Below, in pieces: positions 15,438 to 58,149 of a stretch of 64,000 nucleotides of DNA. The position numbers and the translations under genes are program-made. This stretch comes from Octopus sinensis (taxonomy: Eukaryota): NCBI RefSeq assembly GCF_006345805.1, contig NC_043012.1, positions 13,268,001 through 13,332,000 on the forward strand, given 5' to 3'. Under the pieces are notes generated by a model. That model searched no databases and was not told the origin of the DNA. It was given only the letters and a program-made list of their open reading frames with translations. Positions within the stretch are counted from its first letter, which is position 1; every line of letters begins with the position of its first letter.

Positions 15438-15498
<61 letters not shown>

Positions 15499-15546
15499 GA
15501 TTTATCTATCTATCTACCTATCTATCTATCTATCTATCTGTCTATA

Positions 15547-15607
<61 letters not shown>

Positions 15608-15608
15608 C

Positions 15609-15645
<37 letters not shown>

Positions 15646-15648
15646 ATG

Positions 15649-15682
<34 letters not shown>

Positions 15683-15770
15683 AATCTGTCTGTCTGTCTG
15701 TTTATATATCTATATCTATCTATCTACCTATCTATTTGCCTAACTATCTATCTCTCTATCTATTTTTCTT

Positions 15771-15832
<62 letters not shown>

Positions 15833-15932
15833 AATCTATCTATCTATCTCTTTTCCTCTGTCCCTCTCTGTCTCTCAATGCCTCTCTCTCACTATGGCTG
15901 TCTGTTTCTGTCTTTCTCTCTCTTTTCCTGTC

Positions 15933-22310: not shown

Positions 22311-25300
22311 TTACGAAGAACCTCGTCTAATATGTGGCACTTGGTGAAGAATGGAGTTTGATATAGCTACTCTCATTTGCACCTCTTGCCGTGAGGTAGG
22401 TTCATCTGGGACTCTCGACAGGAAGATGTCCAGCTTTGATTTAAAAACCGCTACATCTACTTTGTGCAAGTTCTTCAGACTCTTTGGAAGAATATAAAAA
22501 AGCTGTGGGCCCTTGAAACCCACGCTGTTACAGAAGCTGGTCCTGAAGCGTGATGGCATTGCTGAGATCTTTGGCACTATGCACTGTCGTCCCGTTCCAG
22601 CATTGGTGTAGCTTATAATGCCAAAATTTGGCACAATTCCTTCCAGGATCTTCCAGACATATATTACTGCATACCTCTCCCGTCTTCTCTCCAGGGAGTA
22701 GAGTCTTAGCTGTTTCAACCTTTCCCAGTAGCTGAGCTGTTGCAAAGAGACGATCTTCTTTGTGAATCTTCTCTGGATTGCTTCAAGGTCCGCTGTTAAT
22801 TTTACACTGGTGGGTGACCATAGCTGTAAGCAGTAATCCAGGCGGCTGAGGACGAATGTCCGCCAGAGGACCATCATGGTTTCCTTATCTCTGGTTATGA
22901 ATGCTTTTAGGATTCACCCAGCCAGTCGTCTGCACTTTGTCGCCATCCTGGTAATGTGCACTTGGAAAGAGGTATCATCACTCATGTCGATACCCAGGTC
23001 CCTCACAGACTTAGGCTCTGGGATTGAAATTCCCCGTGGACCGGTGTATCCTGTAAGTTTAATATTCAGTTTTGGATGCTGGTAGCGCAGGGCCTGGAAT
23101 TTTTCAGCATTAAACTGCATATTATTATCCTCAGCCTATCTGTAGATTGAGTCCAACTCCTGCTGCAGTTGTGCAACATCGCTGGGGTTCTGTATTTTCT
23201 GCGAGACTTTCGTATCGTCTGCATAGCTGGCCAGACTGGCTATCCGGGCATTTGAGGGCATATCTGAGAGGGCCACTATAAAAAGCAGTGGTCCCAAGAC
23301 AGTGTCCTGTGGAACACCACTCACTATTTGTGTGTTCATAGAGGTGGCTCCATTAACCACTACTGCCTGACTACTATCTTTCAGGAAGTCATGTAACCAC
23401 ACTCCAAGTTTTCCAGCTACGCCGAGGTCACGCAGTTTGTGGCATATCATACCACGATCCACCTTGTCAAAAGCTTTTGAAAAATCAAGGTAAATTACGT
23501 CCACATTTGATTTGTTGAATAACTGCCTCAAAACCCAGTCATAATGTTGTAAGAGCTGGGTCAGGCAGCTCCTACCTGGTCGAAAACCATGCTGAGTATC
23601 ACTCAGCAAGTTATCTTCCTCAAGGAATGTGATTAGTTTCTTTCTGACTATCCGTTCCATGACTTTGCTGTGTGTGAAGTCAGAGAGATAGGCCTATAGT
23701 TTTTGACATCTGCTCTACTTCCCCCTTTATGTATTGGGCATATTATTCCCTCCTTCAGCTTGCATGGCAGTTTGCCATTCGCAAGAAAGCTCTGGAAGAG
23801 AATCCTTAGGGGCCCTGCCAGGGCATGCCCACACGCTCTGAGGAGGATGGCTGGGAAACCATCCGGACCAGCAGCTGAGTTTGCGTCCACTTCATCCATG
23901 GCCAGCAGGACATCTTTTTTGCCATTGTCAATACATTCCACTGCAACCGCCTCGCTAGTTATAGGTGAGGCGTCAAAGAAGTCCACTGGTTCGTCCACCT
24001 GTCTGTGCTCCAACGGGGTGGCAAAGACACTCTTGAACTGGTCATTCAGCATCTCACTGATCTCAGTTCGACCGTACGTGAGGGATCCATCCCCCCGGAG
24101 GAGGGGTCCCATCCTGCAGTGCACCGAGACCGTTTCTTTCGCGAAATGAAAGAAGGCCCCTGGGTCTGACTCAATGTTCTTTACAACCCAGGCTTCTCTG
24201 TCTGCTCCCTCCTTCACATAGGACCGTTGCAGCCTTTTTCTGATCTCCATCAGTGTTGTTCTCATGCGGGACGTTTCGCTACTCTTGGGATGTTGGTTGA
24301 GACAATTTGCAGCCTTCGTCCGTCGTCTCATGAGGATCTTCCTGTCTCTTGGAATCTTGCTCCCATTTGTTTTGGCCTTGTGCTCTGGGACATATTTCTG
24401 GGACACGGCTTGCACAGAAGACATGAAACATTCCAGTTTCATGCCAATGTCTGGTGTGGAGAGACATTCCGGCCAATCCTCTCTGAGGACCTCTTTTTGG
24501 ATCGATTTCCAATCTGCTTTGTGGAAGTTCAGATTGGAGAGATTTCGGGTGCTTCCTTTAGGCTGTATGTCTCTGGTTACTTTTGGTCCAAGCACAGACA
24601 GCTCTATTATGTTGTGATCCGAAACTGATGTAGGTGTCACTTTCACATCATGAATGATGTCCATATTGTTTGTGAAGCAGAGATCCAGAATGTTATTCGC
24701 CCTAGTTGGCTTGAGTACAACTTGCTCCATGAATAAGGCATTGGTGAGGTTGAGCAATGATTCATTCCTGAGAGTATGTGACCTTCGGGCCATTTGACGT
24801 TGGGGAAGTTGAAATCACCCATAAGAAATATGGCCACGTTGTGTTCCAGATTCATGAGAATTTCTTTAATTCTTGTGAGGCAATCTTCAAACTTGCCTAT
24901 GTGATTTGGGGCATCCGGTGGGCAATATGTATTGCATATGACTATATTATGTTGTCCTATTAAAGTGTCACACACCGAATTTGAGTATGTCATTAAGACC
25001 TGAGGTGTGAGGTCATCTCGGATGTATACAGCAACTCCACCATGGCTCCTTTCCGTTTTGTCTGTTCGCAGTATGGCATAGTTTGGTATGTGTACTTCTG
25101 CGTCCTCTATATCAGGGTTGAGGTGAGTTTCCACAAGTGCTATGCATAGGGCTTGATTGCATGCAGTAAGATCTCTCAGGAAAGAAATTTTGTTTCTATT
25201 TTGATGCAACAGGCCCACAATATTTAGTAAAAGTATTGGGGTGACGGCTGTGCAGGCGTTAGGGGAGGCCATCCCGTGACTGTTGACTGTGGTGGTCTTG

Positions 25301-25377
25301 CATAGTGGTGGGCAGGGTTCCTTCACTGTGCTTGGTGTAGCCAGGTTAGCTGCCGGACAATTCTTTGCGCCATGCAT
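22311..25377 (-). pseudogene. LINE ORF2 (APE endonuclease plus reverse transcriptase), frameshifted
   Basis: Split over ORFs 24643-25377, 23648-24793, 23136-23660, 22914-23120 and 22311-22877, in the correct domain order. Confidence 0.92.
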
Positions 25378-26015
25378 AACAAAGACTCTTGCTCAGCTGC
25401 TGCGTTGCGCAGAACATCTGAGGAGTGCACTTCGTTTTTGAAAGTTTTCCTGGGAGACATTTCTTGTGTTCCCTCGGTAAAGCTTTTCTCTTTGAGTCCC
25501 CTGAAGTTCTGGCGGGGTGTCGGGTGGGCGAACCGGCAGTTTTTGCCGTCCTCACAATGCCAACATTTGCCCCGCAGGTAGAATTTACAGGTACTTCGGT
25601 GCCTTCCAGATTTCTTCTTTCCTGAGTTGTACTGGGTGGCATTGAATCCTCCATGGGGTTCTCTGCTGTTTGTGTGGTGGGTTGGGGTTTCAGCTTTGGT
25701 TGTTTTGCCTTTTCCCCCTGTTCCCTCCTTATTTTTGTTTTTGGTCCTTCCTTTTTTCTTCTGTTTTTCTAATTTTTCATTTCTTTGGTGGAATATTGGT
25801 ACAGGGGGGCTTCCGGTTTCTGCTCCCTTGGCTCCCCTATCCTTCACTACCTGGTCGTTCACCGGGGTTGGTGATCCATTTTCCTGAGGAACCCCTGGAT
25901 CACAGAGCCTTCCGGCTTCCTTCTCTTTTTCGTCCTCTTCATCCTCATCAGCCTTGTCACAATAATTTTCAATTATATTATCTAGTGTTTTGATGTGTGG
26001 TCTTATAAGCAACTG
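25323..26015 (-). pseudogene. LINE ORF1 remnant with CCCH zinc finger
   Basis: ORF 25323-26042; its first residues come from flanking microsatellite. Basic low-complexity region followed by a C-x7-C-x7-C-x3-H motif. Confidence 0.7.
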
Positions 26016-26214
26016 TATGTATGTATATATATATACATACATACATATATACGATGGGCTTCTTTCCGTTTCCGTCTATCAAATCCACTCGCAAGGCTTT
26101 GGTCAGCCCGAGGCTATAGTAGAAACCACTTGCCCATGGTGGAACGCAGTGGGACTGAACCCGGAACCATATGGCTGGTAAGCAACCTACTTACCCCACA
26201 TCCACTCCTGCGCC
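26016..26214 (-). mobile_element. 5' half (tRNA-like head) of the SINE split by the LINE
   Basis: Minus strand ggcgcaggagtggatgtggggtaagtaggttgcttacc...ccgggttcagtcccactgcg matches 30920-31086. Confidence 0.88.
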
Positions 26215-31248: not shown

Positions 31249-34200
31249 TCAGAGATCAAAGAGGGGTGCCGACAGAAATCAAAGAGGGGTGCCGACAGAG
31301 ATCAAAGAGGGGTACCGACAGAGATCAAAGAGGTGTGCCGACAGAGATCAAAGTAGGTGTCGATAGAGATCGAAGGGGGTGCCGACAGAGATCAAAGAGG
31401 GTGCCGACATAGATCAAAGGGGTGCCGACAGAGAGCAAAGAGGGGTGCCGACAGAGATCAAAGGAGGTCCCGACAGAAATCAAAGAGGGGTGCCGACAGA
31501 GATCAAAGGGGGTGCCGACAGAGATCAAAGAGGGGTGCCGACTGAGGTTAAAAAGGGTGCCGACAGAGATCAAAGTGAGTGCCGACAGAGATCAAAGAGG
31601 GGTGCTGACAAAGATGAAAGGGGGTGCCGACAGAGTTCAAAGAGGGGTGTCGACAGAGATCAAAGAGGGGTGTCGACAGAGATAAAAGGGGGTGTACAGA
31701 GATCAAAGAGGGATGCACAGAGATCAAGGGAGGTGCCGACAGATATCAAAGACGGGTACCTACAGAGATAAAAGAGGGTGCCGACAGAGATCAAAGAGGG
31801 GTACCGACAGAGATCAATGGGGGTGCCGACAGAAATCAAAGAGAGGTGCCGACAGAGATCAAAGAGGGGTGCCGACAGAGATCAAAGGGGGTGCCGACAG
31901 AGACCAAAGGGGGTGCTGACAGAGATCAAAGTGGGTACCGACAGAGATAAAAGAGGGTGCCGACAAAGATCAAAGAGGGGTACCGACAGAGATCAAAGGG
32001 GATGCCGACAGATATCAAAGACGGGTACCTACAGAGATCAAAGAGGGGTACCGACAGAGATCAAAAAAGGGTGCCGACAGAGCTCAAAGAGGGATGCCGA
32101 CAGAGATCAAAGAGGGTGTCGACAGAGATCGATTGGGGTGCCGACAGAAATCAAAGAGAGGTGCCGACAGAGAGCAAAGGGGTACCGACAGAGATCAAAG
32201 GGGGTGCCGACAGAGACCAAAGAGGGTGTCGACAGATATCAAAGATGGGTGCTGATAGAGATCAAAGGGGGTGCCGCCAGAGATCAAAAAGGGTGCCGAG
32301 AGATATTAAAGACATCAAAGAGGGGTGCCGACAGAGATCAAAGAGGGGTGCCGACAGAGATCAAAGGGGGTGCCGACAGAGATCAAAGAGGGGTGCCGAC
32401 AGAGATCAAAGAGGGGTGTCGACAGAGATCAAAGAGGGATGCACAAAGATCAAAGGTAGTGCCGACAGAGATCAGAGGGGGTGCCGACAGAGATCAAAGA
32501 GGGGTGCCGATAGAGATCAAAGAACGGTGCCGACAAGGATCAAAGAGGGTGCCGACAGAGATCAATGGGGTGCCGACAGAGATGAAAGGGGGTGCCAACA
32601 GAGATCAAAGAGGGGTCCCGACAGAGATCAAAGGGGGTGCCGACAGAGATCAAAGACGGGTGCCGACAGAGATCAAAGGGGGTGTACAGAGATCAAAGGG
32701 GGTGCCGACAGAGATCAAAGAGGGGTACCGACAGAGATCAAAGAGGGCTACCGACAGAGATCAAAGAGGGATACCGACAGAGATCAAAGAGGGGTGTCGA
32801 CAGAGATCAAAGAGGGATGCACAGAGATCAATGGGGGTGCCGACAGAGATCAAAGAGGGGTACCGACAGAGATCAAAGAGGGCTACCGACAGAGATCAAA
32901 GAGGGTGCCGACAGAGATCAAAGAGGGGTGCCGACAGAGATCAAAGGGGGTGCCGACAGAGATCAAAGAGGGTGCCGACAGAGATCAAAAAGGGTGCCGA
33001 AAGATATAAAAGAGATCAATGGGGTGCCGACAGAGATCAAAGAGGAGTGCCGACAGAGATCAAAGAGGGGTGTCGACAGAGATCAAAGGGGTGCCGACAG
33101 AGATCAAAGAGGGGTGCCGACAGAGATCAAAGACGGGTGCTGACAGAGATCAAAGGGGGTGTACAGATATCAAAGGGGGTGCCGACAGAGATCAAAGAGG
33201 AGTGTCGACAGAGACCAAAGACGGGTACCGACAGAGATCAAAGAGGGATGCCGACAGAGATCAAAGAGGAGTGTCGACAGAGATCAAAGAGGGATGCACA
33301 GAGATGAAAGGGGGTGCCGACAGAGATCAAAGAGGGGTGCCGAAAGAGATCAAAGAGGGATGCACAGAGATGAAAGGGGTGCCGACAGAGATCAAAGAGG
33401 GGTGCCGAAAGAGATCAAAGAGGGGTGCCGATAGAGATCAAAGAAGGGTGCCGACAAGGATCAAAGAGGGTGCCGACAGAGATCAATCTGGTGCCGACAG
33501 AGATCAAATGGGGGTGCCGACAGAGATCAAAGAGGGGTGCCGACAGAGATCAAAGAGGGTTCCGACAGAGATCAAAGAGGGGTGCCGACAGAGATCAAAG
33601 AACGGTGCCGACAAGGATCAAAGAGGGTGCCGACAGAGATCAATGGGGTGCCGACAGAGATGAAAGGGGGTGCCAACAGAGATCAAAGAGGGGTGCCGAC
33701 AGAGATCAAAGGGGGTGCCGACAGAGATCAAAGACGGGTGCCGACAGAGATCAAAGACGGGTGCCGACAGAGATCAAAGGGGGTGTACAGAGATCAAAGG
33801 GGGTGCCGACAGAGATCAAAGAGGGGTACCGACAGAGATCAAAGAGGGCTACCGACAGAGATCAAAGAGGGGTACCAACAGAGATCAAAGAGGGCTACCG
33901 ACAGAGATCAAAGAGGGATACCGACAGAGATCAAAGAGGGGTGTCGACAGAGATCAAAGAGGGATGCACAGAGATCAATGGGGGTGCCGACAGAGATCAA
34001 AGAGGGGTACCGACAGAGATCAAAGAGGGCTACCGACAGAGATCAAAGAGGGGTACAAACAGAGATCAAAGAGGGCTACCGACAGAGATCAAAGAGGGAT
34101 GCCGACATAGATCAAAGAGGGGTGTCGACAGAGATCAAAGAGGGATGCACAGAGATCAAAGGGGGTGCCGACAGAGATCAAAGAGGGTGCCGACAGAGAT

Positions 34201-34558
34201 CAAAGAGGGGTGCCGACAGAGACCAAAGAGGGTGCCGACAGAGATCAAAGAGGGGTGCCGACAGAGATCAAAGAGGGTTCCGACAGAGATCAAAGAGGGG
34301 TGCCGACAGAGATCAAAGAGGTGTGCCGAGAGAGACCAAAGGGTTGCCGAAAGAGATCAAAGAGGGGTGCCGACAGAGATCAAAGGAGGTACCGACGGAG
34401 ATCAAATGGGATGCCGACATAGATCAAAGAGGGGTGCCGACAGAGATCAAAGAGGGATGCTGACAGAGATCAAAGGGGGGGTTGACAGATATCAAAGGGG
34501 GTGTCGACAGAGATCAAAGAGTGTGCCGAAAAAGATCAAAGAGGGTGCCGAAAGAGAC
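31249..34558. repeat. Minisatellite array, 21-23-bp monomer, consensus GACAGAGATCAAAGAGGGGTGCC, ~150 copies
   Basis: Directly visible. Purine-rich plus strand. Variant blocks recur, e.g. ~32518 and ~33598. Confidence 0.97.
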
Positions 34559-39815: not shown

Positions 39816-40964
39816 CTAAAAACTCGTCACAGCAAAATATATATAAAATACGAAAAGGAATATAACAATTGTTGACAAAAATATTTTGTCTAGCTTCTGA
39901 TAGTTTATAAAATGTCTTTTAGAAATATTTACATCTCTTACTTCAGTATTATGTTCATCTGAGGTTTCTATGACACCAACTCTATTTCTGGATCCTTTGG
40001 ATTCTCGTGTAATTTCTGGAGTTAAATTGATGTCTGCTCCAGTCTGTTGAGCATAAAGTTTACACACAAATACCGATTCGATAGAGGAACATCCACTGAC
40101 AAATGTCAGAATCAAAAGATATATTAGATATAAAGAGGGATCCTGTGAATTATTGCCCAATATTTTTTCAGTTTCAGAAAGGAAAACGATGTTTGTAAGA
40201 AAAATAGTTATTGCAGCACAAACTTTCTCTCCAGATGCAGCTGGCAATAAATGAACGGAAAGGATCAATAATTTTAACATTATTGGGGGTATAATTTTTG
40301 TTATTGTTGCACTGCTAACCTTTCTCTTGCCGTGAACTGTAAGACCAACTGCCATAACATCCTCAGTTTCCTTCTCTGTCTCAGTAAAGGTGAAATCCCA
40401 TTGATTTGATTTAGTTTTCAATTTTATATCAATATCAAATTCCTCTATCATTACGTCCATAAACATCTGATGATCAAGGCAAACAGATACATCACATTCG
40501 TGCACATCAAAAGGATAATTTTTAACGTTAATCCTGCAGTATGTTTTAAATATTTTGTCTATATGTAAGTGAACGAACCCATCTTGTTTGACAGTGACTT
40601 CCTTGTACGGATCGAAACTGAAATCACCTGATACGGTATTACATATTTGAATATTGGGATGCCAAATATCAGATAAGTAAGCATCTATATGGCTTTGAGT
40701 ATAATTTGAATCACTCCATTTCAGATTCTTGTCCTGCCATTTTATGCCGAGATTCAGATGACTTACGAGAATACCTTGCTTAATGTCTAATCCCATAATA
40801 TTCTTTATGACAAGTGTCACATTTAGGCTTAATTCGGTCTCATTCGCAGCAACAGGTGTAATTTTCTTATCATAGTTTTTGAGTACTTCACGTCCCAAGT
40901 AATAATAATCTTCTGTAGAAGCGCTTCCAATTGATATAACAATTAAGGCAACTATCAATTTCAT
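39816..40964 (-). CDS. Cys-loop ligand-gated cation channel, cephalopod chemotactile receptor (CR)-like, copy A, 382 aa
   Basis: Signal peptide MKLIVALIVISIGSAS, WxPxI motif (IWHPNI), Cys-loop C-x13-C (CRINVKNYPFDVHEC), four hydrophobic helices, PAASGEK before M2, short M3-M4 loop. No vicinal loop-C cysteines, uninterrupted CDS, tandem copy nearby. The start is placed at Met45 of ORF 39816-41096 because it begins the signal peptide. Confidence 0.93.
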   Translation of the reverse strand: MKLIVALIVISIGSASTEDYYYLGREVLKNYDKKITPVAANETELSLNVTLVIKNIMGLDIKQGILVSHLNLGIKWQDKNLKWSDSNYTQSHIDAYLSDIWHPNIQICNTVSGDFSFDPYKEVTVKQDGFVHLHIDKIFKTYCRINVKNYPFDVHECDVSVCLDHQMFMDVMIEEFDIDIKLKTKSNQWDFTFTETEKETEDVMAVGLTVHGKRKVSSATITKIIPPIMLKLLILSVHLLPAASGEKVCAAITIFLTNIVFLSETEKILGNNSQDPSLYLIYLLILTFVSGCSSIESVFVCKLYAQQTGADINLTPEITRESKGSRNRVGVIETSDEHNTEVRDVNISKRHFINYQKLDKIFLSTIVIFLFVFYIYFAVTSF

Positions 40965-47787: not shown

Positions 47788-48936
47788 CTAAGAACTCGAC
47801 ACAGCAAAAAATATATAAAATACTAAAAGGAATATAACAATTGTTGACAAAAATATTTTGTCTAGCTTCTGATAGTTTATAAAATGTCTTTTAGAAATAT
47901 TTACATCTCTTACTTCAATATTATGTCCATCTGAGGTTTCTATGACACTAACCCTATTTCTGGATCTTTTGGATTCACGTGTAATTTCTGGAGTTAAATT
48001 GATGTCTGCTCCAGTCTGTTGGGCATAAAGTTTACACACAAATACCGATTCGATAGAGGAACATCCACTGACAAATGTCAGAATTAAAAGATATATTAGA
48101 TATAAAGAGGGATCCTGTGAATTATTGCCCAATATTTTTTCAGTTTCAGAAAGGAAAACGATGTTTGTAAGAAAAATAGTTATTGCAGCACACACTTTCT
48201 CTCCAGATGCAGCTGGCAATAAATGAACGGAAAGGATCAATAATGTTAACATTATTGGGGGTATAATTTTTGTTATTGTTGCACTGCTAACCTTTCTCTT
48301 GCCGTGAAGTGTAAGACCAACTGCCATAACATCCTTAGTTTCCTTCTCAGTCTCAGTAAAAGTGAAATCCCATTGATTTGATTTAGCTTTCAATTTTATA
48401 TCAAAATCAAAATCCTCTATAATTACGTCCATAAATATCTGATGATCAAGGCAAACAGATACATCACATTCGTGCACATCAAAAGGATAATATTTAACGT
48501 TAATCCTGCAGTATATTTTAAATATTTTGTCTATATGTAAGTGAACGAACCCATCTTGTTTGACAGTGACTTCCTTGTACGGATCGAAACTGAAATCACC
48601 TGATACGGTATTACATATTTGAATATCGGGATACCAAATTTCAGATAAGTAAGCCTCTCTATGTCTTTGTGTAAATTTTGAATAATCCCATTTCAGATTA
48701 TTATCCTGCCATTTTATGCCGAGATTCAGATGACTTACGAGAATACCTTGCTTCATGTCTAATTCCAGAATATTCTTTATGACAAGTGTCACATTTAGGC
48801 TTAATTCGGTTTCATTCGCAGCAACAGGTGTCATTTTTTTATCATAGCCTTTGTTATATTCACCTTCCATGTAATAATAATCTTCTGTAGAAGCGCTTCC
48901 AATTGATATAACAATTAAGGCAACTATCAATTTCAT
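47788..48936 (-). CDS. Cys-loop ligand-gated cation channel, cephalopod chemotactile receptor (CR)-like, copy B, 382 aa
   Basis: Same architecture as copy A (signal peptide, CRINVKYYPFDVHEC Cys-loop, GEK, four TMs, intact frame). The start is Met21 of ORF 47788-48996. Confidence 0.93.
   Translation of the reverse strand: MKLIVALIVISIGSASTEDYYYMEGEYNKGYDKKMTPVAANETELSLNVTLVIKNILELDMKQGILVSHLNLGIKWQDNNLKWDYSKFTQRHREAYLSEIWYPDIQICNTVSGDFSFDPYKEVTVKQDGFVHLHIDKIFKIYCRINVKYYPFDVHECDVSVCLDHQIFMDVIIEDFDFDIKLKAKSNQWDFTFTETEKETKDVMAVGLTLHGKRKVSSATITKIIPPIMLTLLILSVHLLPAASGEKVCAAITIFLTNIVFLSETEKILGNNSQDPSLYLIYLLILTFVSGCSSIESVFVCKLYAQQTGADINLTPEITRESKRSRNRVSVIETSDGHNIEVRDVNISKRHFINYQKLDKIFLSTIVIFLLVFYIFFAVSSS

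Positions 48937-53861: not shown

Positions 53862-53870
<9 letters not shown>
52780..53870 (+). mobile_element. Penelope-like element remnant with inverted terminal segment
   Basis: ~52870-52950 is repeated inverted at 53800-53870, and 52780-52950 again at 59230-59400. Very AT-rich interior with a hammerhead motif near the right end. The PLE call rests on this architecture, not on a recognisable ORF. Confidence 0.55.
53686..53748 (+). ncRNA. Type I hammerhead ribozyme motif (PLE-type, palindromic helix III)
   Basis: ccac-CTGATGA-a-tgtct...agaca-g-GAAA-cgatcg-TA-gtgg. Helix I is 4 bp, helix II is extended with an A.G mismatch at its base, helix III is the palindrome ACGATCGT, and the cleavage triplet is GUA. 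Confidence 0.7.
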
Positions 53871-53903
<33 letters not shown>

Positions 53904-54125
53904 TCAATATAGGGTGGCAAAAGAAAATTTTGTAGAATTTTTTTGCCACCAGCGGCCTAGTGGGAAAAAATTAAATAGTCATAGACCATTTATAAGTTCA
54001 ACATCACAATCAAGGAACGGCCATAATAGGCCATTCACCCACTAGAAATAACAGCCAAAGCTTCAACCGCAAAATAACATTAATTCCGTAAACCAGGAGA
54101 AAATTAAAAAAACATTTACCCTGTA

Positions 54126-54232
54126 ATTTCTTATACGATGCACCGTTTCATCTATTGTTTAATGGTAAACTAACCTGATTAAATTAAATCAAGCCAATCT
54201 TCCATAGGCCCTTAGATTCGTCAGTAAGAAAT
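54126..54232 (-). ncRNA. Type I hammerhead ribozyme, array copy 1
   Basis: Reverse complement of the fold described for 55277-55383. Confidence 0.85.
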
Positions 54233-54615
54233 AGCCAGATCGGAACAGATATTTTCACGAGGCACTTCTGTCCCTGCCTCGGCAATATCTGACCTAAAAT
54301 TTTCAAATCATCGCACTCGCGCCAAATTTATCGGCAGCAAATAAATATAAGCCGCCGATTCCATTACGGAATCAACCAGAAAATTCATAATTAATCAATA
54401 TCGGGTGGCAAAAAAAATTTTGTAGAATTTTTTTGCCACCAGCGGCCTAGTGGGAAAAAATTAAATAGTCATAGACCATTTATAAGTTCAACATCACAAT
54501 CAAGGAACGGCCATAATAGGCCATTCACCCACTAGAAATAACAGCCAAAGCTTCAACTGCAAAATAACATTAATTCCGTAAACCAGGAGAAAATTAAAAA
54601 AACATTTACCCTGTA

Positions 54616-54722
54616 ATTTCTTATACGATGCACCGTTTCATCTATTGTTTAATGGTAAACTAACCTGATTAAAGTAAATCAAGCCAATCTTCCATAGGCC
54701 CTTAGATTCGTCAGTAAGAAAT
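54616..54722 (-). ncRNA. Type I hammerhead ribozyme, array copy 2
   Basis: Core and helices I-III intact; one substitution in the distal helix II loop. Confidence 0.85.
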
Positions 54723-55276
54723 AGCCAGATCGGAACAGATATTTTCACGAGGCACTTCTGTCCCTGCCTCGGCAATATCTGACCTAAAATTTTCAAATCA
54801 TCGCACTCGCGCCAAATTTATCGGCAGCAAATAAATATAAGCCGCCGATTCCATTACGAATCAACCAGAAAATTCATAATTAATCAATATATGGTGGCAA
54901 AAAAAATTTTGTAGAATTTTTTTGCCACCAGCGGCCTAGTGGGAAAAAATTAAATAGTCATATACCATTTATAAGTTCAACATCACAATCAATTATGGCC
55001 GCTCCTTGATTGTGATGTTGAACTTATAAATGGTCTATGACTATTTAATTTTTTCCCACTAGGCCGCTGGTGGCAAAAAAATTCTACAAAATTTTTTTTG
55101 CCACCCTATATTGATTAATTATGAATTTTCTGGTTGATTCCGTAATGGAATCGGCGGCTTATATTTATTTGCTGCCGATAAATTTGGCGCGAGTGCGATG
55201 ATTTGAAAATTTTAGGTCAGATATTGCCGAGGCAGGGACAGAAGTGCCTCGTGAAAATATCTGTTCCGATCTGGCT

Positions 55277-55383
55277 ATTTCTTACTGACGAATCTAAGGG
55301 CCTATGGAAGATTGGCTTGATTTAATTTAATCAGGTTAGTTTACCATTAAACAATAGATGAAACGGTGCATCGTATAAGAAAT
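55277..55383 (+). ncRNA. Type I hammerhead ribozyme, array copy 3
   Basis: Helix I atttctta(55277-84)/taagaaat(55376-83), 8 bp perfect. CTGACGA 55285-91. Helix II atcta/tagat closing a 58-nt hairpin insert. GAAA 55360-63. Helix III cggtgcatcg. U16.1-A17 at 55374-75 (GUA site). Confidence 0.88.
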
Positions 55384-55766
55384 TACAGGGTAAATGTTTT
55401 TTTAATTTTCTCCTGGTTTACGGAATTAATGTTATTTTGCGGTTGAAGCTTTGGCTGTTATTTCTAGTGGGTGAATGGCCTATTATGGCCGTTCCTTGAT
55501 TGTGATGTTGAACTTATAAATGGTCTATGACTATTTAATTTTTTCCCACTAGGCCGCTGGTGGCAAAAAAATTCTACAAAATTTTTTTTGCCACCCTATA
55601 TTGATTAATTATGAATTTTCTGGTTGATTCCGTAATGGAATCGGCGGCTTATATTTATTTGCTGCCGATAAATTTGGCGCGAGTGCGATGATTTGAAAAT
55701 TTTAGGTCAGATATTGCCGAGGCAGGGACAGAAGTGCCTCGTGAAAATATCTGTTCCGATCTGGCT

Positions 55767-55873
55767 ATTTCTTACTGACGAATCTAAGGGCCTATGGAAG
55801 ATTGGCTTGATTTAATTTAATCAGGTTAGTTTACCATTAAACAATAGATGAAACGGTGCATCGTATAAGAAAT
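55767..55873 (+). ncRNA. Type I hammerhead ribozyme, array copy 4
   Basis: Same as copy 3, +490 bp. Confidence 0.85.
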
Positions 55874-56256
55874 TACAGGGTAAATGTTTTTTTAATTTTC
55901 TCCTGGTTTACGGAATTAATGTTATTTTGCGGTTGAAGCTTTGGCTGTTATTTCTAGTGGGTGAATGGCCTATTATGGCCGTTCCTTGATTGTGATGTTG
56001 AACTTATAAATGGTCTATGACTATTTAATTTTTTCCCACTAGGCCGCTGGTGGCAAAAAAATTCTACAAAATTTTTTTTGCCACCCTATATTGATTAATT
56101 ATGAATTTTCTGGTTGATTCCGTAATGGAATCGGCGGCTTATATTTATTTGCTGCCGATAAATTTGGCGCGAGTGCGATGATTTGAAAATTTTAGGTCAG
56201 ATATTGCCGAGGCAGGGACAGAAGTGCCTCGTGAAAATATCTGTTCCGATCTGGCT

Positions 56257-56363
56257 ATTTCTTACTGACGAATCTAAGGGCCTATGGAAGATTGGCTTGA
56301 TTTAATTTAATCAGGTTAGTTTACCATTAAACAATAGATGAAACGGTGCATCGTATAAGAAAT
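56257..56363 (+). ncRNA. Type I hammerhead ribozyme, array copy 5
   Basis: Same as copy 3. Confidence 0.85.
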
Positions 56364-56744
56364 TACAGGGTAAATGTTTTTTTAATTTTCTCCTGGTTTA
56401 CGGAATTAATGTTATTTTGCGGTTGAAGCTTTGGCTGTTATTTCTAGTGGGTGAATGGCCTATTATGGCCGTTCCTTGATTGTGATGTTGAACTTATAAA
56501 TGGTCTATGACTATTTAATTTTTTCCCACTAGGCGCTGGTGGCAAAAAAATTCTACAAAATTTTTTTTGCCACCCTATATTGATTAATTATGAATTTTCT
56601 GGTTGATTCCGTAATGGAATCGGCGGCTTATATTTATTTGCTGCCGATAAATTGGCGCGAGTGCGATGATTTGAAAATTTTAGGTCAGATATTGCCGAGG
56701 CAGGGACAGAAGTGCCTCGTGAAAATATCTGTTCCGATCTGGCT

Positions 56745-56851
56745 ATTTCTTACTGACGAATCTAAGGGCCTATGGAAGATTGGCTTGATTTAATTTAATC
56801 TGGTTAGTTTACCATTAAACAATAGATGAAACGGTGCATCGTATAAGAAAT
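56745..56851 (+). ncRNA. Type I hammerhead ribozyme, array copy 6
   Basis: Core intact; one substitution in the distal helix II insert. Confidence 0.85.
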
Positions 56852-57234
56852 TACAGGGTAAATGTTTTTTTAATTTTCTCCAGGTTTACGGAATTAATGT
56901 TATTTTGCAGTTGAAGCTTTGGCTGTTATTTCTAGTGGGTGAATGGCCTATTATGGCCGTTCCTTGATTGTGATGTTGAACTTATAAATGGTCTATGACT
57001 ATTTAATTTTTTCCCACTAGGCCGCTGGTGGCAAAAAAATTCTACAAAATTTTTTTTGCCACCCTATATTGATTAATTATGAATTTTCTGGTTGATTCCG
57101 TAATGGAATCGGCGGCTTATATTTATTTGCTGCCGATAAATTTGGCGCGAGTGCGATGATTTGAAAATTTTAGGTCAGATATTGCCGAGGCAGGGACAGA
57201 AGTGCCTCGTGAAAATATCTGTTCCGATCTGGCT

Positions 57235-57340
57235 ATTTCTTACTGACGAATCTAAGGGCCTATGGAAGATTGGCTTGATTTAATTAATCAGGTTAGTTTA
57301 CCATTAAACAATAGATGAAACGGTGCATCGTATAAGAAAT
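57235..57340 (+). ncRNA. Type I hammerhead ribozyme, array copy 7
   Basis: Core intact; 1-nt deletion in the distal loop. Confidence 0.85.
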
Positions 57341-57723
57341 TACAGGGTAAATGTTTTTTTAATTTTCTCCTGGTTTACGGAATTAATGTTATTTTGCGGT
57401 TGAAGCTTTGGCTGCTATTTCTAGTGGGTGAATGGCCTATTATGGCCGTTCCTTGATTGTGATGTTGAACTTATAAATGGTCTATGACTATTTAATTTTT
57501 TCCCACTAGGCCGCTGGTGGCAAAAAAATTCTACAAAATTTTTTTTGCCACCCTATATTGATTAATTATGAATTTTCTGGTTGATTCCGTAATGGAATCG
57601 GCGGCTTATATTTATTTGCTGCCGATAAATTTGGCGCGAGTGCGATGATTTGAAAATTTTAGGTCAGATATTGCCGAGGCAGGGACAGAAGTGCCTCGTG
57701 AAAATATCTGTTCCGATCTGGCT

Positions 57724-57830
57724 ATTTCTTACTGACGAATCTAAGGGCCTATGGAAGATTGGCTTGATTTAATTTAATCAGGTTAGTTTACCATTAAACA
57801 ATAGATGAAACGGTGCATCGTATAAGAAAT
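57724..57830 (+). ncRNA. Type I hammerhead ribozyme, array copy 8
   Basis: Same as copy 3. Confidence 0.85.
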
Positions 57831-57954
57831 TACAGGGTAAATGTTTTTTTAATTTTCTCCTGGTTTACGGAATTAATGTTATTTTGCGGTTGAAGCTTTG
57901 GCTGCTATTTCTAGTGGGTGAGTGGCCTATTATGGCCGTTCCTTGATTGTGATG

Positions 57955-58016
<62 letters not shown>

Positions 58017-58149
58017 TATATATATATTATATATATATATATATGTATATATATAGGGGAGAAAGAGAACGGGTGTGAAATAAAGAGTGTGAGGAAAAAT
58101 AAAATAATAGTCCTATAAAATTTAAAAGTTTAATTTTTTAAATCGAAAA

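What the first reader, a model, noticed from the sequence alone, without database searches (positions are those of the whole stretch)
53897..57954. Retrozyme-like tandem array: every ~490-bp monomer encodes a complete type I hammerhead ribozyme
Seen: 8 copies of atttctta-CTGACGA-atcta[58-nt hairpin]tagat-GAAA-cggtgcatcg-TA-taagaaat. All conserved core nucleotides are present (C3 U4 G5 A6 N7 G8 A9, G12 A13 A14, A15.1-U16.1, H17=A), with an 8-bp perfect helix I. The rest of the monomer is full of hairpins (ggtggcaaaaaaaatt...aattttttttgccacc; agatatt..cgaggca..tgcctcg..aatatct; gattcc..ggaatc; ctagtggg..cccactag). Established: tandem genomic repeats with type I hammerheads are transcribed and self-process to monomers and circRNAs in newt satellite 2, Schistosoma Sm-alpha, Dolichopoda pDo500 and metazoan non-LTR retrozymes, whose monomers are mostly shorter than this. 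Inference: this is a cephalopod retrozyme-like element yielding ~490-nt structured monomers, possibly circular. I do not know of it being described in octopus, but I could not search.
Basis: partly seen in the sequence, partly recalled or inferred. Interest (0 to 1): 0.92.

Follow-up and report, generated by a model that had tools for sequence, protein, structure and literature searches.

The report
Octopus hammerhead-ribozyme retroelement array (retrozyme)
A 4-kb block of 490-bp repeats in the Octopus sinensis genome is a recently inserted, non-coding mobile element in which every repeat carries a hammerhead self-cleaving RNA motif; it is a new cephalopod member of the known "retrozyme" class, and its insertion looks like the work of Penelope-like retrotransposons.

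Summary
Eight near-identical 490-bp units each carry a complete type I hammerhead (HHR) motif.

Rfam does not detect the window's HHR. The reasons are a 58-nt hairpin inside helix II, an A10.1-U11.1 pair and a GUA cleavage site. The motif is nonetheless far above chance.

A diverged relative, family B, lies about 25 kb away and also in O. vulgaris. It is 66% identical overall. At the same monomer position it keeps all 12 core bases, while stems I-III stay paired through 9 double substitutions. B has the canonical G10.1-C11.1 pair and GUC site, and Rfam Hammerhead_1 is its best hit, though below threshold.

The array sits inside a (TA)n microsatellite. O. vulgaris has a clean empty site there. 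Both loci show inverted plus direct arms, with outer ends at the same conserved internal positions (about 108-132 and 232-237). This matches published behaviour of Penelope-like elements: AT-rich targets, both strands extended, internal start of reverse transcription.

Verdict: a new member of a known kind, a non-LTR retrozyme or PLE-dependent element. Self-cleavage, circular RNA and transcription are untested.

The parts
53865..53898 (.). Left part of the (AT)n microsatellite that was split by the insertion.
   Evidence: TRF. O. vulgaris has one uninterrupted (AT)n tract at the orthologous site.
53896..54992 (-). Inverted arm: 2.2 monomers with the HHR sense on the minus strand. Its 3' end lies at 53896, which is monomer position 232-237. 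Its 5' end lies at the centre, at monomer position 121.
   Evidence: TRF; blastn of the monomer against the window; junction sequences.
54980..55004 (.). Head-to-head junction of the two arms. The sequence here is a near-palindrome with a 13-nt asymmetric centre, TTATGGCCGCTCC.
   Evidence: The Rfam 'mir-3145' hit at 54967-55031 only reflects this palindrome.
54992..57954 (+). Direct arm: 6.06 monomers with the HHR sense on the plus strand. Its 5' end is at monomer position ~108 and its 3' end, at 57954, is at monomer position 132.
57955..58055 (.). Right part of the split (AT)n microsatellite.
   Evidence: TRF; empty-site comparison.
55277..55383 (+). Reference hammerhead domain. Helix I 5' strand is 55277-55284 and the CUGACGA core is 55285-55291. 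Helix II with its 58-nt hairpin is 55292-55359, and GAAA is 55360-55363. Helix III is 55363-55374, with A15.1 shared between GAAA and helix III. A17 is at 55375 and cleavage falls between 55375 and 55376. Helix I 3' strand is 55376-55383.
55767..55873 (+). Hammerhead domain, copy 2.
   Evidence: CM hit of 139.3 bits.
56257..56363 (+). Hammerhead domain, copy 3.
56745..56851 (+). Hammerhead domain, copy 4. It has an A-to-T change in the distal helix II hairpin.
57235..57340 (+). Hammerhead domain, copy 5. It has a 1-nt deletion in the apical loop of helix II.
57724..57830 (+). Hammerhead domain, copy 6.
54616..54722 (-). Hammerhead domain of the inverted arm. It has an A-to-C change in the apical loop.
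54126..54232 (-). Hammerhead domain of the inverted arm.
55472..55483 (+). Invariant block TGAATGGCCTAT (monomer positions 97-108), part of a stem-loop. It ends at position 108. The direct arm of family B ends at that position, and the direct arm of the window's array begins there. It is a candidate site where reverse transcription starts.
   Evidence: The assigned role is an inference.
55598..55611 (+). Invariant block ATATTGATTAATTA (monomer positions 223-236). The inverted arms of both the A and B insertions end at its 3' edge. It is a candidate second site where reverse transcription starts.
   Evidence: The assigned role is an inference.

Best explanation
The block is a recent insertion of a non-coding, non-autonomous retroelement of the non-LTR retrozyme kind in Octopus sinensis.

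Proposed mechanism:
1. The 490-nt unit is transcribed from the plus (G+U-rich) strand as a multimer.
2. Each unit folds a type I hammerhead that can cut after GUA at the unit boundary (inferred). The palindromic helix III would also allow a two-copy, dimeric form.
3. The resulting monomers are highly base-paired and may be ligated into circles (inferred).
4. Copies return to the genome through the reverse transcriptase and GIY-YIG endonuclease of a Penelope-like element (PLE).
5. That enzyme nicks both strands of an AT-rich target, here a (TA)n microsatellite. It extends both nicks, starting at fixed internal sites of a multimeric or circular RNA template.
6. This leaves two arms pointing outwards, 2.2 and 6.1 units long, that meet head-to-head.

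Shown here: the anatomy, the empty site, homology to an older family, covariation in the ribozyme, and the shared junction positions.

Inferred: transcription, cleavage, circularisation, and which enzyme did the insertion.
For: 1. The HHR is real as a conserved RNA motif.
- A covariance model built only from the window's copies finds family B HHRs at 61.5 and 57.5 bits (E about 1e-11) and nothing else in 228 kb.
- On the model alignment, 93.7% of cells are paired, against 27-45% when the partners are slid. Nine pairs changed on both sides (helix I 4, basal helix II 2, distal helix II 2, helix III 1), against 0-1 when slid.
- RNAalifold on a structure-blind MAFFT alignment independently recovers helix I, distal helix II and helix III.
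- The core is 12/12 identical, the helix I-III stems are 12/28 identical, and the whole monomer is 66% identical.
- Family B has G10.1-C11.1 and a GUC site. Rfam Hammerhead_1 is its top hit at 21.9 bits, E = 0.0027.
- The palindromic UGCA loop 3 is conserved. Published work lists a palindromic loop 3 as a hallmark of metazoan HHRs (PMC4209133).

2. The RNA is read from the plus strand.
- The structure conservation index is 0.55 on the plus strand and 0.36 on the minus strand.
- The plus-strand consensus contains 41 G-U pairs.

3. The element is mobile.
- O. vulgaris has an uninterrupted (AT)n at the orthologous site. The flanks are 99.2% and 95.7% identical.
- Monomers are 99.4-100% identical to each other.
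- Family B is an independent insertion with unrelated flanks, also inside (TA)n. It is shared by both species at 98.1% identity.

4. The insertion carries a PLE signature.
- Both loci have an inverted arm plus a direct arm.
- The outer ends fall at monomer positions 232-237 and 108/132 in both loci. Two of these positions coincide with the edges of two of the four longest invariant blocks.
- Published PLE traits match. PMC8557442 reports partial tandems with an inverted 5'-truncated copy and a (TA)n bias.
- PMC11167929 reports that purified PLE protein cuts and extends both strands, prefers AT-rich DNA, and starts reverse transcription internally in a stem-loop about 90 nt 3' of the HHR site.

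5. Class features are met: no ORF, 36.5% GC, strong folding at z = -5.9, as described for non-LTR retrozymes (PMC7229834).
Against: - No hammerhead model in Rfam detects the window's copies at any threshold, and all hits to the relatives are below the gathering score.
- Family A has A10.1-U11.1 instead of the highly conserved G10.1-C11.1, GUA instead of GUC, and a helix II much longer than the canonical 4 bp. It shows no recognisable loop 1-loop 2 contacts. Activity could therefore be low or lost.
- The covariation rests on only two independent lineages (A and B), and the counted alignment was fitted to the structure.
- None of the insertion ends coincides with the HHR cleavage site. In the one PLE studied in vitro, HHR cleavage was not needed for insertion. 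Self-cleavage may therefore not be part of the mobility step.
- No transcript evidence could be obtained.
- No PLE gene lies in the window. Similarity of the monomer to a PLE pseudo-LTR was not tested.
- Absence from O. vulgaris could be a deletion between the flanking (AT)n tracts. O. bimaculoides could not be aligned there to decide.
Confidence: 0.8

Rival explanations
1. This is an ordinary satellite or tandem repeat in which a hammerhead-like string arose by chance. There is no ribozyme and no RNA-level function.
For: All eight copies are near-identical, so together they are one observation. Rfam does not detect a hammerhead in them. The 10.1-11.1 pair is non-canonical. A genome-wide chance expectation of up to about 1 cannot be excluded from the random-sequence extrapolation when G-U pairs are allowed.
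Against: A relative only 66% identical keeps all 12 core bases at the same monomer position and keeps all three helices paired through 9 double substitutions. The relative is the best Rfam Hammerhead_1 hit in its region. Structure is conserved preferentially on one strand, with many G-U pairs.
Confidence: 0.05
2. The element is a PLE-derived non-autonomous repeat, and its hammerhead is a passenger or relic. Mobility and any function do not depend on self-cleavage or on circular RNA. Uncleaved multimeric transcripts are the template.
For: In vitro, catalytic HHR mutants of a PLE insert normally and unprocessed RNA is the main substrate (PMC11167929). None of the eight arm ends at the two loci lies at the cleavage site. 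The recently active family A has the weaker-looking motif (A10.1-U11.1, GUA).
Against: The core and the pairing are maintained between families that diverged by 34%. This implies selection on the ribozyme in the lineage of active copies. The inverted-arm copy of B, which is not under such selection, has already lost helix III and the 3' strand of helix II.
Confidence: 0.12
3. The window's array, or at least its inverted arm and copy number, is an artefact of long-read assembly, or a polymorphic or deleted state. It would then not be a species-specific insertion.
For: Only one O. sinensis assembly is available; the same contig is held under two accessions. Palindromic junctions are a known artefact class (my own knowledge). 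Five of the 15 variant sites are single-base indels, which may be sequencing errors. A deletion between the flanking (AT)n tracts in O. vulgaris cannot be excluded.
Against: The same architecture recurs at the independent B locus in two separate species assemblies: an inverted arm ending at about position 235 and a direct arm ending at about position 108-132, both inside (TA)n. The two arms of A are not exact mirror images; they differ at 7 sites. The flanks are collinear with O. vulgaris on both sides.
Confidence: 0.03

Closest known systems
Metazoan non-LTR retrozymes (Cervera and de la Pena 2020, PMC7229834; Li et al. 2026 preprint, 10.64898/2026.07.22.740005)
   Same: Tandem units of a few hundred bp, each with a type I HHR. 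Low GC, no ORF, no LTRs. The predicted RNA is highly self-paired. The class is known in molluscs (mussel) and many other phyla. Reported consensus lengths run from 51 to 972 bp and most families have at most 7 units.
   Different: Helix II carries a conserved ~58-nt hairpin, where the canonical stem is 4 bp closed by a loop. Helix III has 4 bp. Family A has A10.1-U11.1 and GUA. No cephalopod example was found in the searchable literature. Expression and circularity were not shown here.
Hammerhead motifs in pseudo-LTRs of Penelope-like elements, and PLE insertion behaviour (PMC4209133, PMC8557442, PMC11167929)
   Same: Insertion into (TA)n or AT-rich DNA. Partial tandems with an adjacent inverted 5'-truncated copy. 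Insertion ends at fixed internal RNA sites about 100 nt 3' of the HHR. Palindromic helix III and loop 3. Helix II longer than usual.
   Different: No RT or GIY-YIG ORF in or next to the element. The unit is 490 bp, not about 3 kb. PLE mini-HHRs typically lack helix III, have an extra base between positions 9 and 10.1, and keep G10.1-C11.1. Sequence similarity to an octopus PLE pseudo-LTR was not tested.
Dolichopoda pDo500 satellite (about 500 bp), newt satellite 2 and Schistosoma Sm-alpha hammerheads
   Same: Type I HHR embedded once per repeat of a genomic tandem family. pDo500 has a similar unit size and shows compensatory changes, including at positions 10.1-11.1 (PMC2837043).
   Different: Those families form large species-wide satellites or SINE-like families with demonstrated in vitro cleavage. 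Here only two small loci were seen, there is no biochemical evidence, and the helix II architecture differs.

Membership tests
Hammerhead ribozyme, type I | Conserved catalytic core: C3 U4 G5 A6 N7 G8 A9, G12 A13 A14, A15.1-U16.1, and H17 not G. | tested here: met
   All are present in 8/8 copies. They are identical in family B, where H17 changes from A to C, which is allowed.
Hammerhead ribozyme, type I | Three helices around the core, with helix I open (type I topology), supported by covariation. | tested here: met
   Helix lengths are 8/5/4 bp. Nine pairs changed on both sides between A and B, and 93.7% of cells are paired against 27-45% when slid. RNAalifold on a MAFFT alignment recovers helices I and III and distal helix II. 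Only two independent lineages are compared.
Hammerhead ribozyme, type I | The highly conserved G10.1-C11.1 pair. | tested here: not met
   The window's family A has A10.1-U11.1. Family B has G10.1-C11.1. This is a compensated change; such changes at 10.1-11.1 are reported in pDo500.
Hammerhead ribozyme, type I | Score at or above the Rfam RF00163 gathering threshold of 34 bits. | tested here: not met
   Family A gives no hit, even at E <= 10 on 161 nt. Family B gives 21.9 bits. The L007 motif gives 16.7 bits. The large helix II insert is penalised.
Hammerhead ribozyme, type I | Tertiary contacts between loop 1 (or a bulge) and loop 2. | tested here: inconclusive
   Helix I is a perfect 8-bp stem. 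Helix II opens into a 7x7-nt internal loop after 5 bp. No canonical contact motif could be recognised. Mussel retrozyme HHRs also lack most of them.
Hammerhead ribozyme, type I | Mg2+-dependent self-cleavage at the predicted site. | not testable with these tools
   Needs in vitro transcription of 55260-55420 and of a dimer.
Non-LTR retrozyme | Short tandem units, each with a type I HHR, and no LTR or ORF. | tested here: met
   There is no ORF longer than 69 codons in any frame of a trimer.
Non-LTR retrozyme | Low GC (below 45-50%) and a highly self-paired monomer RNA. | tested here: met
   GC is 36.5%. The circular-fold z-score is -5.9 with 60% of bases paired. The minus strand also scores -5.5, so the z-score alone does not identify the strand.
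Non-LTR retrozyme | Dispersed multi-copy family showing signs of transposition. | tested here: met
   There are two independent insertions of two subfamilies, with an empty site in the sister species. Genome-wide copy number could not be measured.
Non-LTR retrozyme | [quoted passage not shown] | not testable with these tools
   No nucleotide-level access to octopus transcriptomes. Protein-route look-ups of monomer ORFs found nothing.
PLE-mobilised element | Insertion into (TA)n or AT-rich DNA, with tandem plus inverted 5'-truncated structure. | tested here: met
   compared with PMC8557442 and PMC11167929.
PLE-mobilised element | 3' ends at fixed internal RNA sites (the 'tail' signature). | tested here: met
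   Ends fall at 232-237 in both loci, and at 108 (B) or 132 (A). This rests on only four ends.
PLE-mobilised element | Sequence relationship to the pseudo-LTR of an autonomous PLE in the same genome. | not tested
   No octopus PLE sequence could be fetched. PLEs are reported in Octopus genomes.

The most novel reading that the evidence does not exclude
This locus pair may be direct structural evidence that animal retrozymes are inserted by Penelope-like element machinery through target-primed reverse transcription on both strands at (TA)n. Reverse transcription would start at two conserved internal sites of a multimeric or circular ribozyme RNA. Family A, which carries an unusual HHR (a 58-nt helix II hairpin and A10.1-U11.1), would have been active since the O. 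sinensis / O. vulgaris split and could still be active.
Probability: 0.45. Interest if true: 0.6.

Novelty: new member of a known kind. Interest (0 to 1): 0.5.

Why it matters
Retrozymes and their small ribozyme RNAs are known from corals, mussels, insects and amphibians. How they move is still inferred mostly from co-occurrence with Penelope-like elements.

This case offers three things. There is a young insertion with a clean empty site in a sister species. There is an older orthologous insertion of a sister family. Both share the same two-arm architecture and the same junction positions. Together they give concrete, testable predictions about where reverse transcription starts and why inverted arms form.

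It also adds cephalopods to the hosts of this class. And it shows a hammerhead variant that curated models miss, so similar elements are probably under-counted by standard scans.

Tried and rejected
1. Rfam at gathering and at E <= 10, over the whole window, the 4.9-kb region and a 161-nt slice: no hammerhead for family A. The hits to mir-3145, RalA and mir-5728 only reflect hairpins and palindromes.

2. Other copies inside the window: none by blastn or by the descriptor. The other CTGACGA sites (11271, 11947, 12628, 44244) lack the rest of the motif.

3. tRNA-like or SINE origin: ARAGORN finds no tRNA.

4. Coding potential: no significant ORF.

5. Reaching other copies or transcripts through predicted proteins.
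- Exact look-up of the 40-aa ORF found nothing.
- A homology search with the 67-aa ORF found nothing.
- A homology search with a concatenate of all six-frame stop-free segments found nothing.

6. Scans of public contig collections with a 22-mer from the HHR and with a 21-base conserved-block pattern: 0 hits in metagenome contigs. The conserved-block pattern also gave 0 hits in viral contigs.

7. Orthologous or related copies in O. bimaculoides: none in three loci totalling 63 kb. The best model hit there is a plain hairpin with no core. The insertion could therefore not be polarised with an outgroup.

8. Snap-back origin of the inverted arm: the arms of A are not exact mirror images (7 differences). 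In B the two inner ends lie at different monomer positions. Extension from both strands therefore fits better.

9. A ribozyme on the opposite strand: none found by the descriptor or by Rfam.


Full report
**1. What is there**

Tandem Repeats Finder reports a 490-bp period over 53896-54992 (2.2 copies) and 54992-57954 (6.1 copies). The consensus units of the two stretches are reverse complements of each other. (AT)n tracts lie on both sides, at 53865-53898 and 57955-58055.

Six copies are on the plus strand, with CTGACGA at 55285, 55775, 56265, 56753, 57243 and 57732. Two are on the minus strand, at 54714 and 54224. Cleavage would fall after A55375 and its equivalents.

The eight copies differ at only 15 sites in total. 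None is in the catalytic core, and three are in the distal helix II hairpin. They are therefore one observation repeated, and they cannot show covariation among themselves.

The block is not a simple head-to-tail array. Two arms point outwards from a head-to-head junction near 54992.

**2. Is the hammerhead motif more than chance?**

Rfam finds no hammerhead in the window's copies. This holds at gathering thresholds, at E <= 10 on the 4.9-kb region and on a 161-nt slice.

A descriptor of my own required CUGANGA, GAAA, U16.1, H17 and three helices, and allowed a helix II insert of up to 80 nt. It matched only the array copies in the window, even when relaxed.

In 30 Mb of composition-matched random sequence the descriptor gave:
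- 45 hits at helix lengths >=3/3/2;
- 2 hits at >=4/4/3;
- 0 hits at >=5/4/3.

The observed helix lengths are 8/5/4. Extrapolating, about 3e-5 such motifs are expected per window. Between roughly 0.003 and 1 are expected per octopus-sized genome, depending on whether G-U pairs are allowed. This is suggestive on its own but not decisive for a scan of many windows.

**3. Where the window comes from**

Two intronless Cys-loop receptor genes lie at 39816-40964 and 47788-48936, both on the minus strand. Their best solved-structure match is the octopus chemotactile receptor CRT1.

Exact look-up places them on Octopus sinensis chromosome CM016874.1 of assembly GCA_006345805.1. The window corresponds to about 13,268,001-13,332,000 on that chromosome.

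**4. Relatives**

Flanks of paralogous and orthologous receptor genes were fetched as loci.

A diverged relative, family B, lies about 25 kb from the array, at L005 19219-20211. Its orthologue in O. vulgaris is at L008 5643-6633. The two are 98.1% identical and have collinear flanks.

The B monomer is 470 bp. It aligns with the A monomer along its whole length at 66% identity.

At the homologous position, B carries ttctttg-CTGACGA-gaca[55 nt]tgtc-GAAA-ctatgcatag-TC|caaaga. Compared with A:
- the catalytic core is unchanged;
- the 10.1-11.1 pair is the canonical G-C;
- the cleavage triplet is the canonical GUC;
- helix III is C-U-A / U-A-G around the same palindromic UGCA loop;
- helix II again carries a long hairpin with the same apex, GAUUUAAUUUAAU.

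**5. Covariation**

A covariance model was built from the window's copies alone. It finds the B hammerheads at 61.5 and 57.5 bits (E about 1e-11). It finds the decayed inverted-arm copies at 38-39 bits, and nothing else in 228 kb.

Pair counts on the model alignment:

| Measure | Observed | Partners slid by 1-3 columns |
|---|---|---|
| Cells paired | 93.7% | 27-45% |
| Pairs changed on both sides | 9 | 0-1 |

The nine double changes are four in helix I, two in basal helix II, two in the distal hairpin and one in helix III.

That alignment was fitted to the structure. As a check, RNAalifold was run on a plain MAFFT alignment of whole monomers. It independently predicted helix I, the distal hairpin and helix III, each with compensatory changes.

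Conservation by region:
- catalytic core: 12/12 identical;
- stem positions of helices I-III: 12/28 identical;
- loop 3 and the apical loop of helix II: fully identical.

The curated Rfam Hammerhead_1 model is the top hit on B at 21.9 bits, E = 0.0027, covering the full model. It stays below the gathering score of 34 because of the helix II insert.

The inverted-arm copy of B has lost the 3' strand of helix II and part of helix III. That is what is expected for an inserted copy no longer under selection.

The caveat is that A and B are only two independent lineages.

**6. Which strand is the RNA?**

Both strands fold far better than shuffled sequence, with z = -5.9 and -5.5. The internal inverted repeats are symmetric, so this does not separate the strands.

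Conservation of structure does separate them. The structure conservation index for A plus B is 0.55 on the HHR strand and 0.36 on the other. The HHR-strand consensus uses 41 G-U pairs, which would be A-C mismatches on the opposite strand.

**7. The array is an insertion**

In O. vulgaris (L003) the two flanks of the array are contiguous. L001 1-954 matches L003 4216-5167 at 99.2%. L001 5039-15711 matches L003 5133-15664 at 95.7%.

At the sequence level, O. vulgaris has one uninterrupted (AT)n tract where O. sinensis has (AT)n, then the array, then (AT)n.

The monomers are 99.4-100% identical to each other, closer than the two species' flanks are to each other. The simplest reading is an insertion after the species split.

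A deletion between the (AT)n tracts in O. vulgaris cannot be excluded, because O. bimaculoides does not align there.

**8. Insertion signature**

Monomer positions are numbered from the HHR cleavage site.

| Element | Arm | Inner (5') end | Outer (3') end |
|---|---|---|---|
| Array A | direct | 108 | 132 |
| Array A | inverted | 121 | 232-237 |
| Element B | direct | 12 nt before the cleavage site | 108 |
| Element B | inverted | about 300 | equivalent of 232-236 |

(for A; for B.)

B has unrelated flanks and also lies inside (TA)n. Two independent insertions therefore share the architecture and the positions of their outer ends.

Positions 108 and 236 are the 3' edges of two of the four longest blocks that are invariant between A and B: TGAATGGCCTAT (97-108) and ATATTGATTAATTA (223-236).

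**9. Comparison with the literature**

Non-LTR retrozymes:
- They are tandem repeats with type I HHRs, low GC and no ORF.
- They are expressed as self-paired linear and circular RNAs.
- They are known in cnidarians, mussels, amphibians and many invertebrates (PMC7229834).
- A 2026 preprint reports consensus lengths of 51-972 bp and argues that they derive from pseudo-LTRs of Penelope-like elements.

Penelope-like elements (PLEs):
- They insert as partial tandems, often with an inverted 5'-truncated copy, and favour microsatellites including (TA)n (PMC8557442).
- A purified PLE protein cuts and extends both DNA strands and prefers AT-rich DNA.
- It starts reverse transcription at two internal sites in a stem-loop about 90 nt downstream of the HHR cut.
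- It does not need HHR cleavage for insertion in vitro (PMC11167929).

The octopus loci match each of these points. I take that as good but circumstantial evidence that a PLE enzyme made them.

PLEs are annotated in Octopus genomes. I found no paper describing hammerheads or retrozymes in cephalopods.

**10. What remains inferred**

Transcription, self-cleavage, circularisation and the identity of the mobilising enzyme are not shown.

The following features may lower family A's activity:
- the A10.1-U11.1 pair, where G10.1-C11.1 is described as highly conserved (PMC4209133);
- the GUA cleavage site;
- the 5-bp basal helix II followed by a 7x7 internal loop and a long hairpin;
- the lack of recognisable loop-loop contacts.

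In both families helix III together with its UGCA loop is self-complementary. A two-copy ribozyme with an extended helix III is therefore possible, as in other metazoan HHRs.

None of the arm ends lies at the cleavage site. The template was therefore multimeric or circular RNA, not a cleaved linear monomer.

**11. Verdict**

The element is a new, cephalopod member of a known kind.

Two features add interest:
- a hammerhead variant that is invisible to Rfam;
- an unusually clear insertion footprint that links retrozymes to PLE-type integration.

Noticed in passing
L005 19219-20211 (O. sinensis CM016874.1 about 13,350,378-13,351,367); orthologue at L008 5643-6633 (O. vulgaris): An older, diverged sister family (B, 470-bp unit) of the same element. 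It lies inside (TA)n and has an inverted arm whose hammerhead has decayed and a direct arm whose hammerhead is intact and canonical (G10.1-C11.1, GUC). The insertion is shared by both species.
   Followed up: yes
L007 34572-34659 (-), next to (TA)23 at L007 34491-34537: A third, unrelated hammerhead-like motif: CTGATGA-gaagac...gtcttc-GAAA-catatg-TC. It has a 2-bp helix III with a palindromic AUAU loop and a large helix II insert. Its 3' end lies about 40 nt from a (TA)n tract. Rfam Hammerhead_1 is its top hit at 16.7 bits, E = 0.16. It may be the 3' end of a PLE or of another non-autonomous family. No ORF lies nearby.
   Followed up: partly
window 39816-40964 (-) and 47788-48936 (-): Two intronless, tandemly duplicated Cys-loop receptor genes of 382 aa each. 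Their best solved-structure match is the octopus chemotactile receptor CRT1. More paralogues lie nearby on the same chromosome (L005, L006, L007). The retrozyme array sits about 5 kb upstream of the second gene.
   Followed up: partly
window 22311-25377 (-), with a further ORF at 25323-26042 (-): A remnant of a LINE-type retrotransposon. It has a reverse transcriptase domain (Pfam RVT_1) split over several ORFs. It is not a Penelope-like element.
   Followed up: partly
window 31250-34557: A 3.3-kb minisatellite with period 23/45 bp and about 147 copies, at GC about 53% with strong purine skew. It creates long overlapping open reading frames in several frames that are almost certainly not genes.
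   Followed up: partly
window 15438-15849: A (CTAT)103 microsatellite that gives a 217-codon spurious ORF. (TA)n, (AC)n and (TAGA)n tracts are very frequent throughout the window.
   Followed up: no
window around 11947 and 12628 (-): Two identical stretches of at least 140 nt lie about 680 bp apart, so this is a local duplicated segment. It contains CTGACGA by chance, with no hammerhead context.
   Followed up: no
L010 9406-9511 (O. bimaculoides): A long, nearly perfect hairpin (inverted repeat) directly next to a (TA)n tract. It was picked up weakly by the covariance model on both strands but has no hammerhead core.
   Followed up: partly
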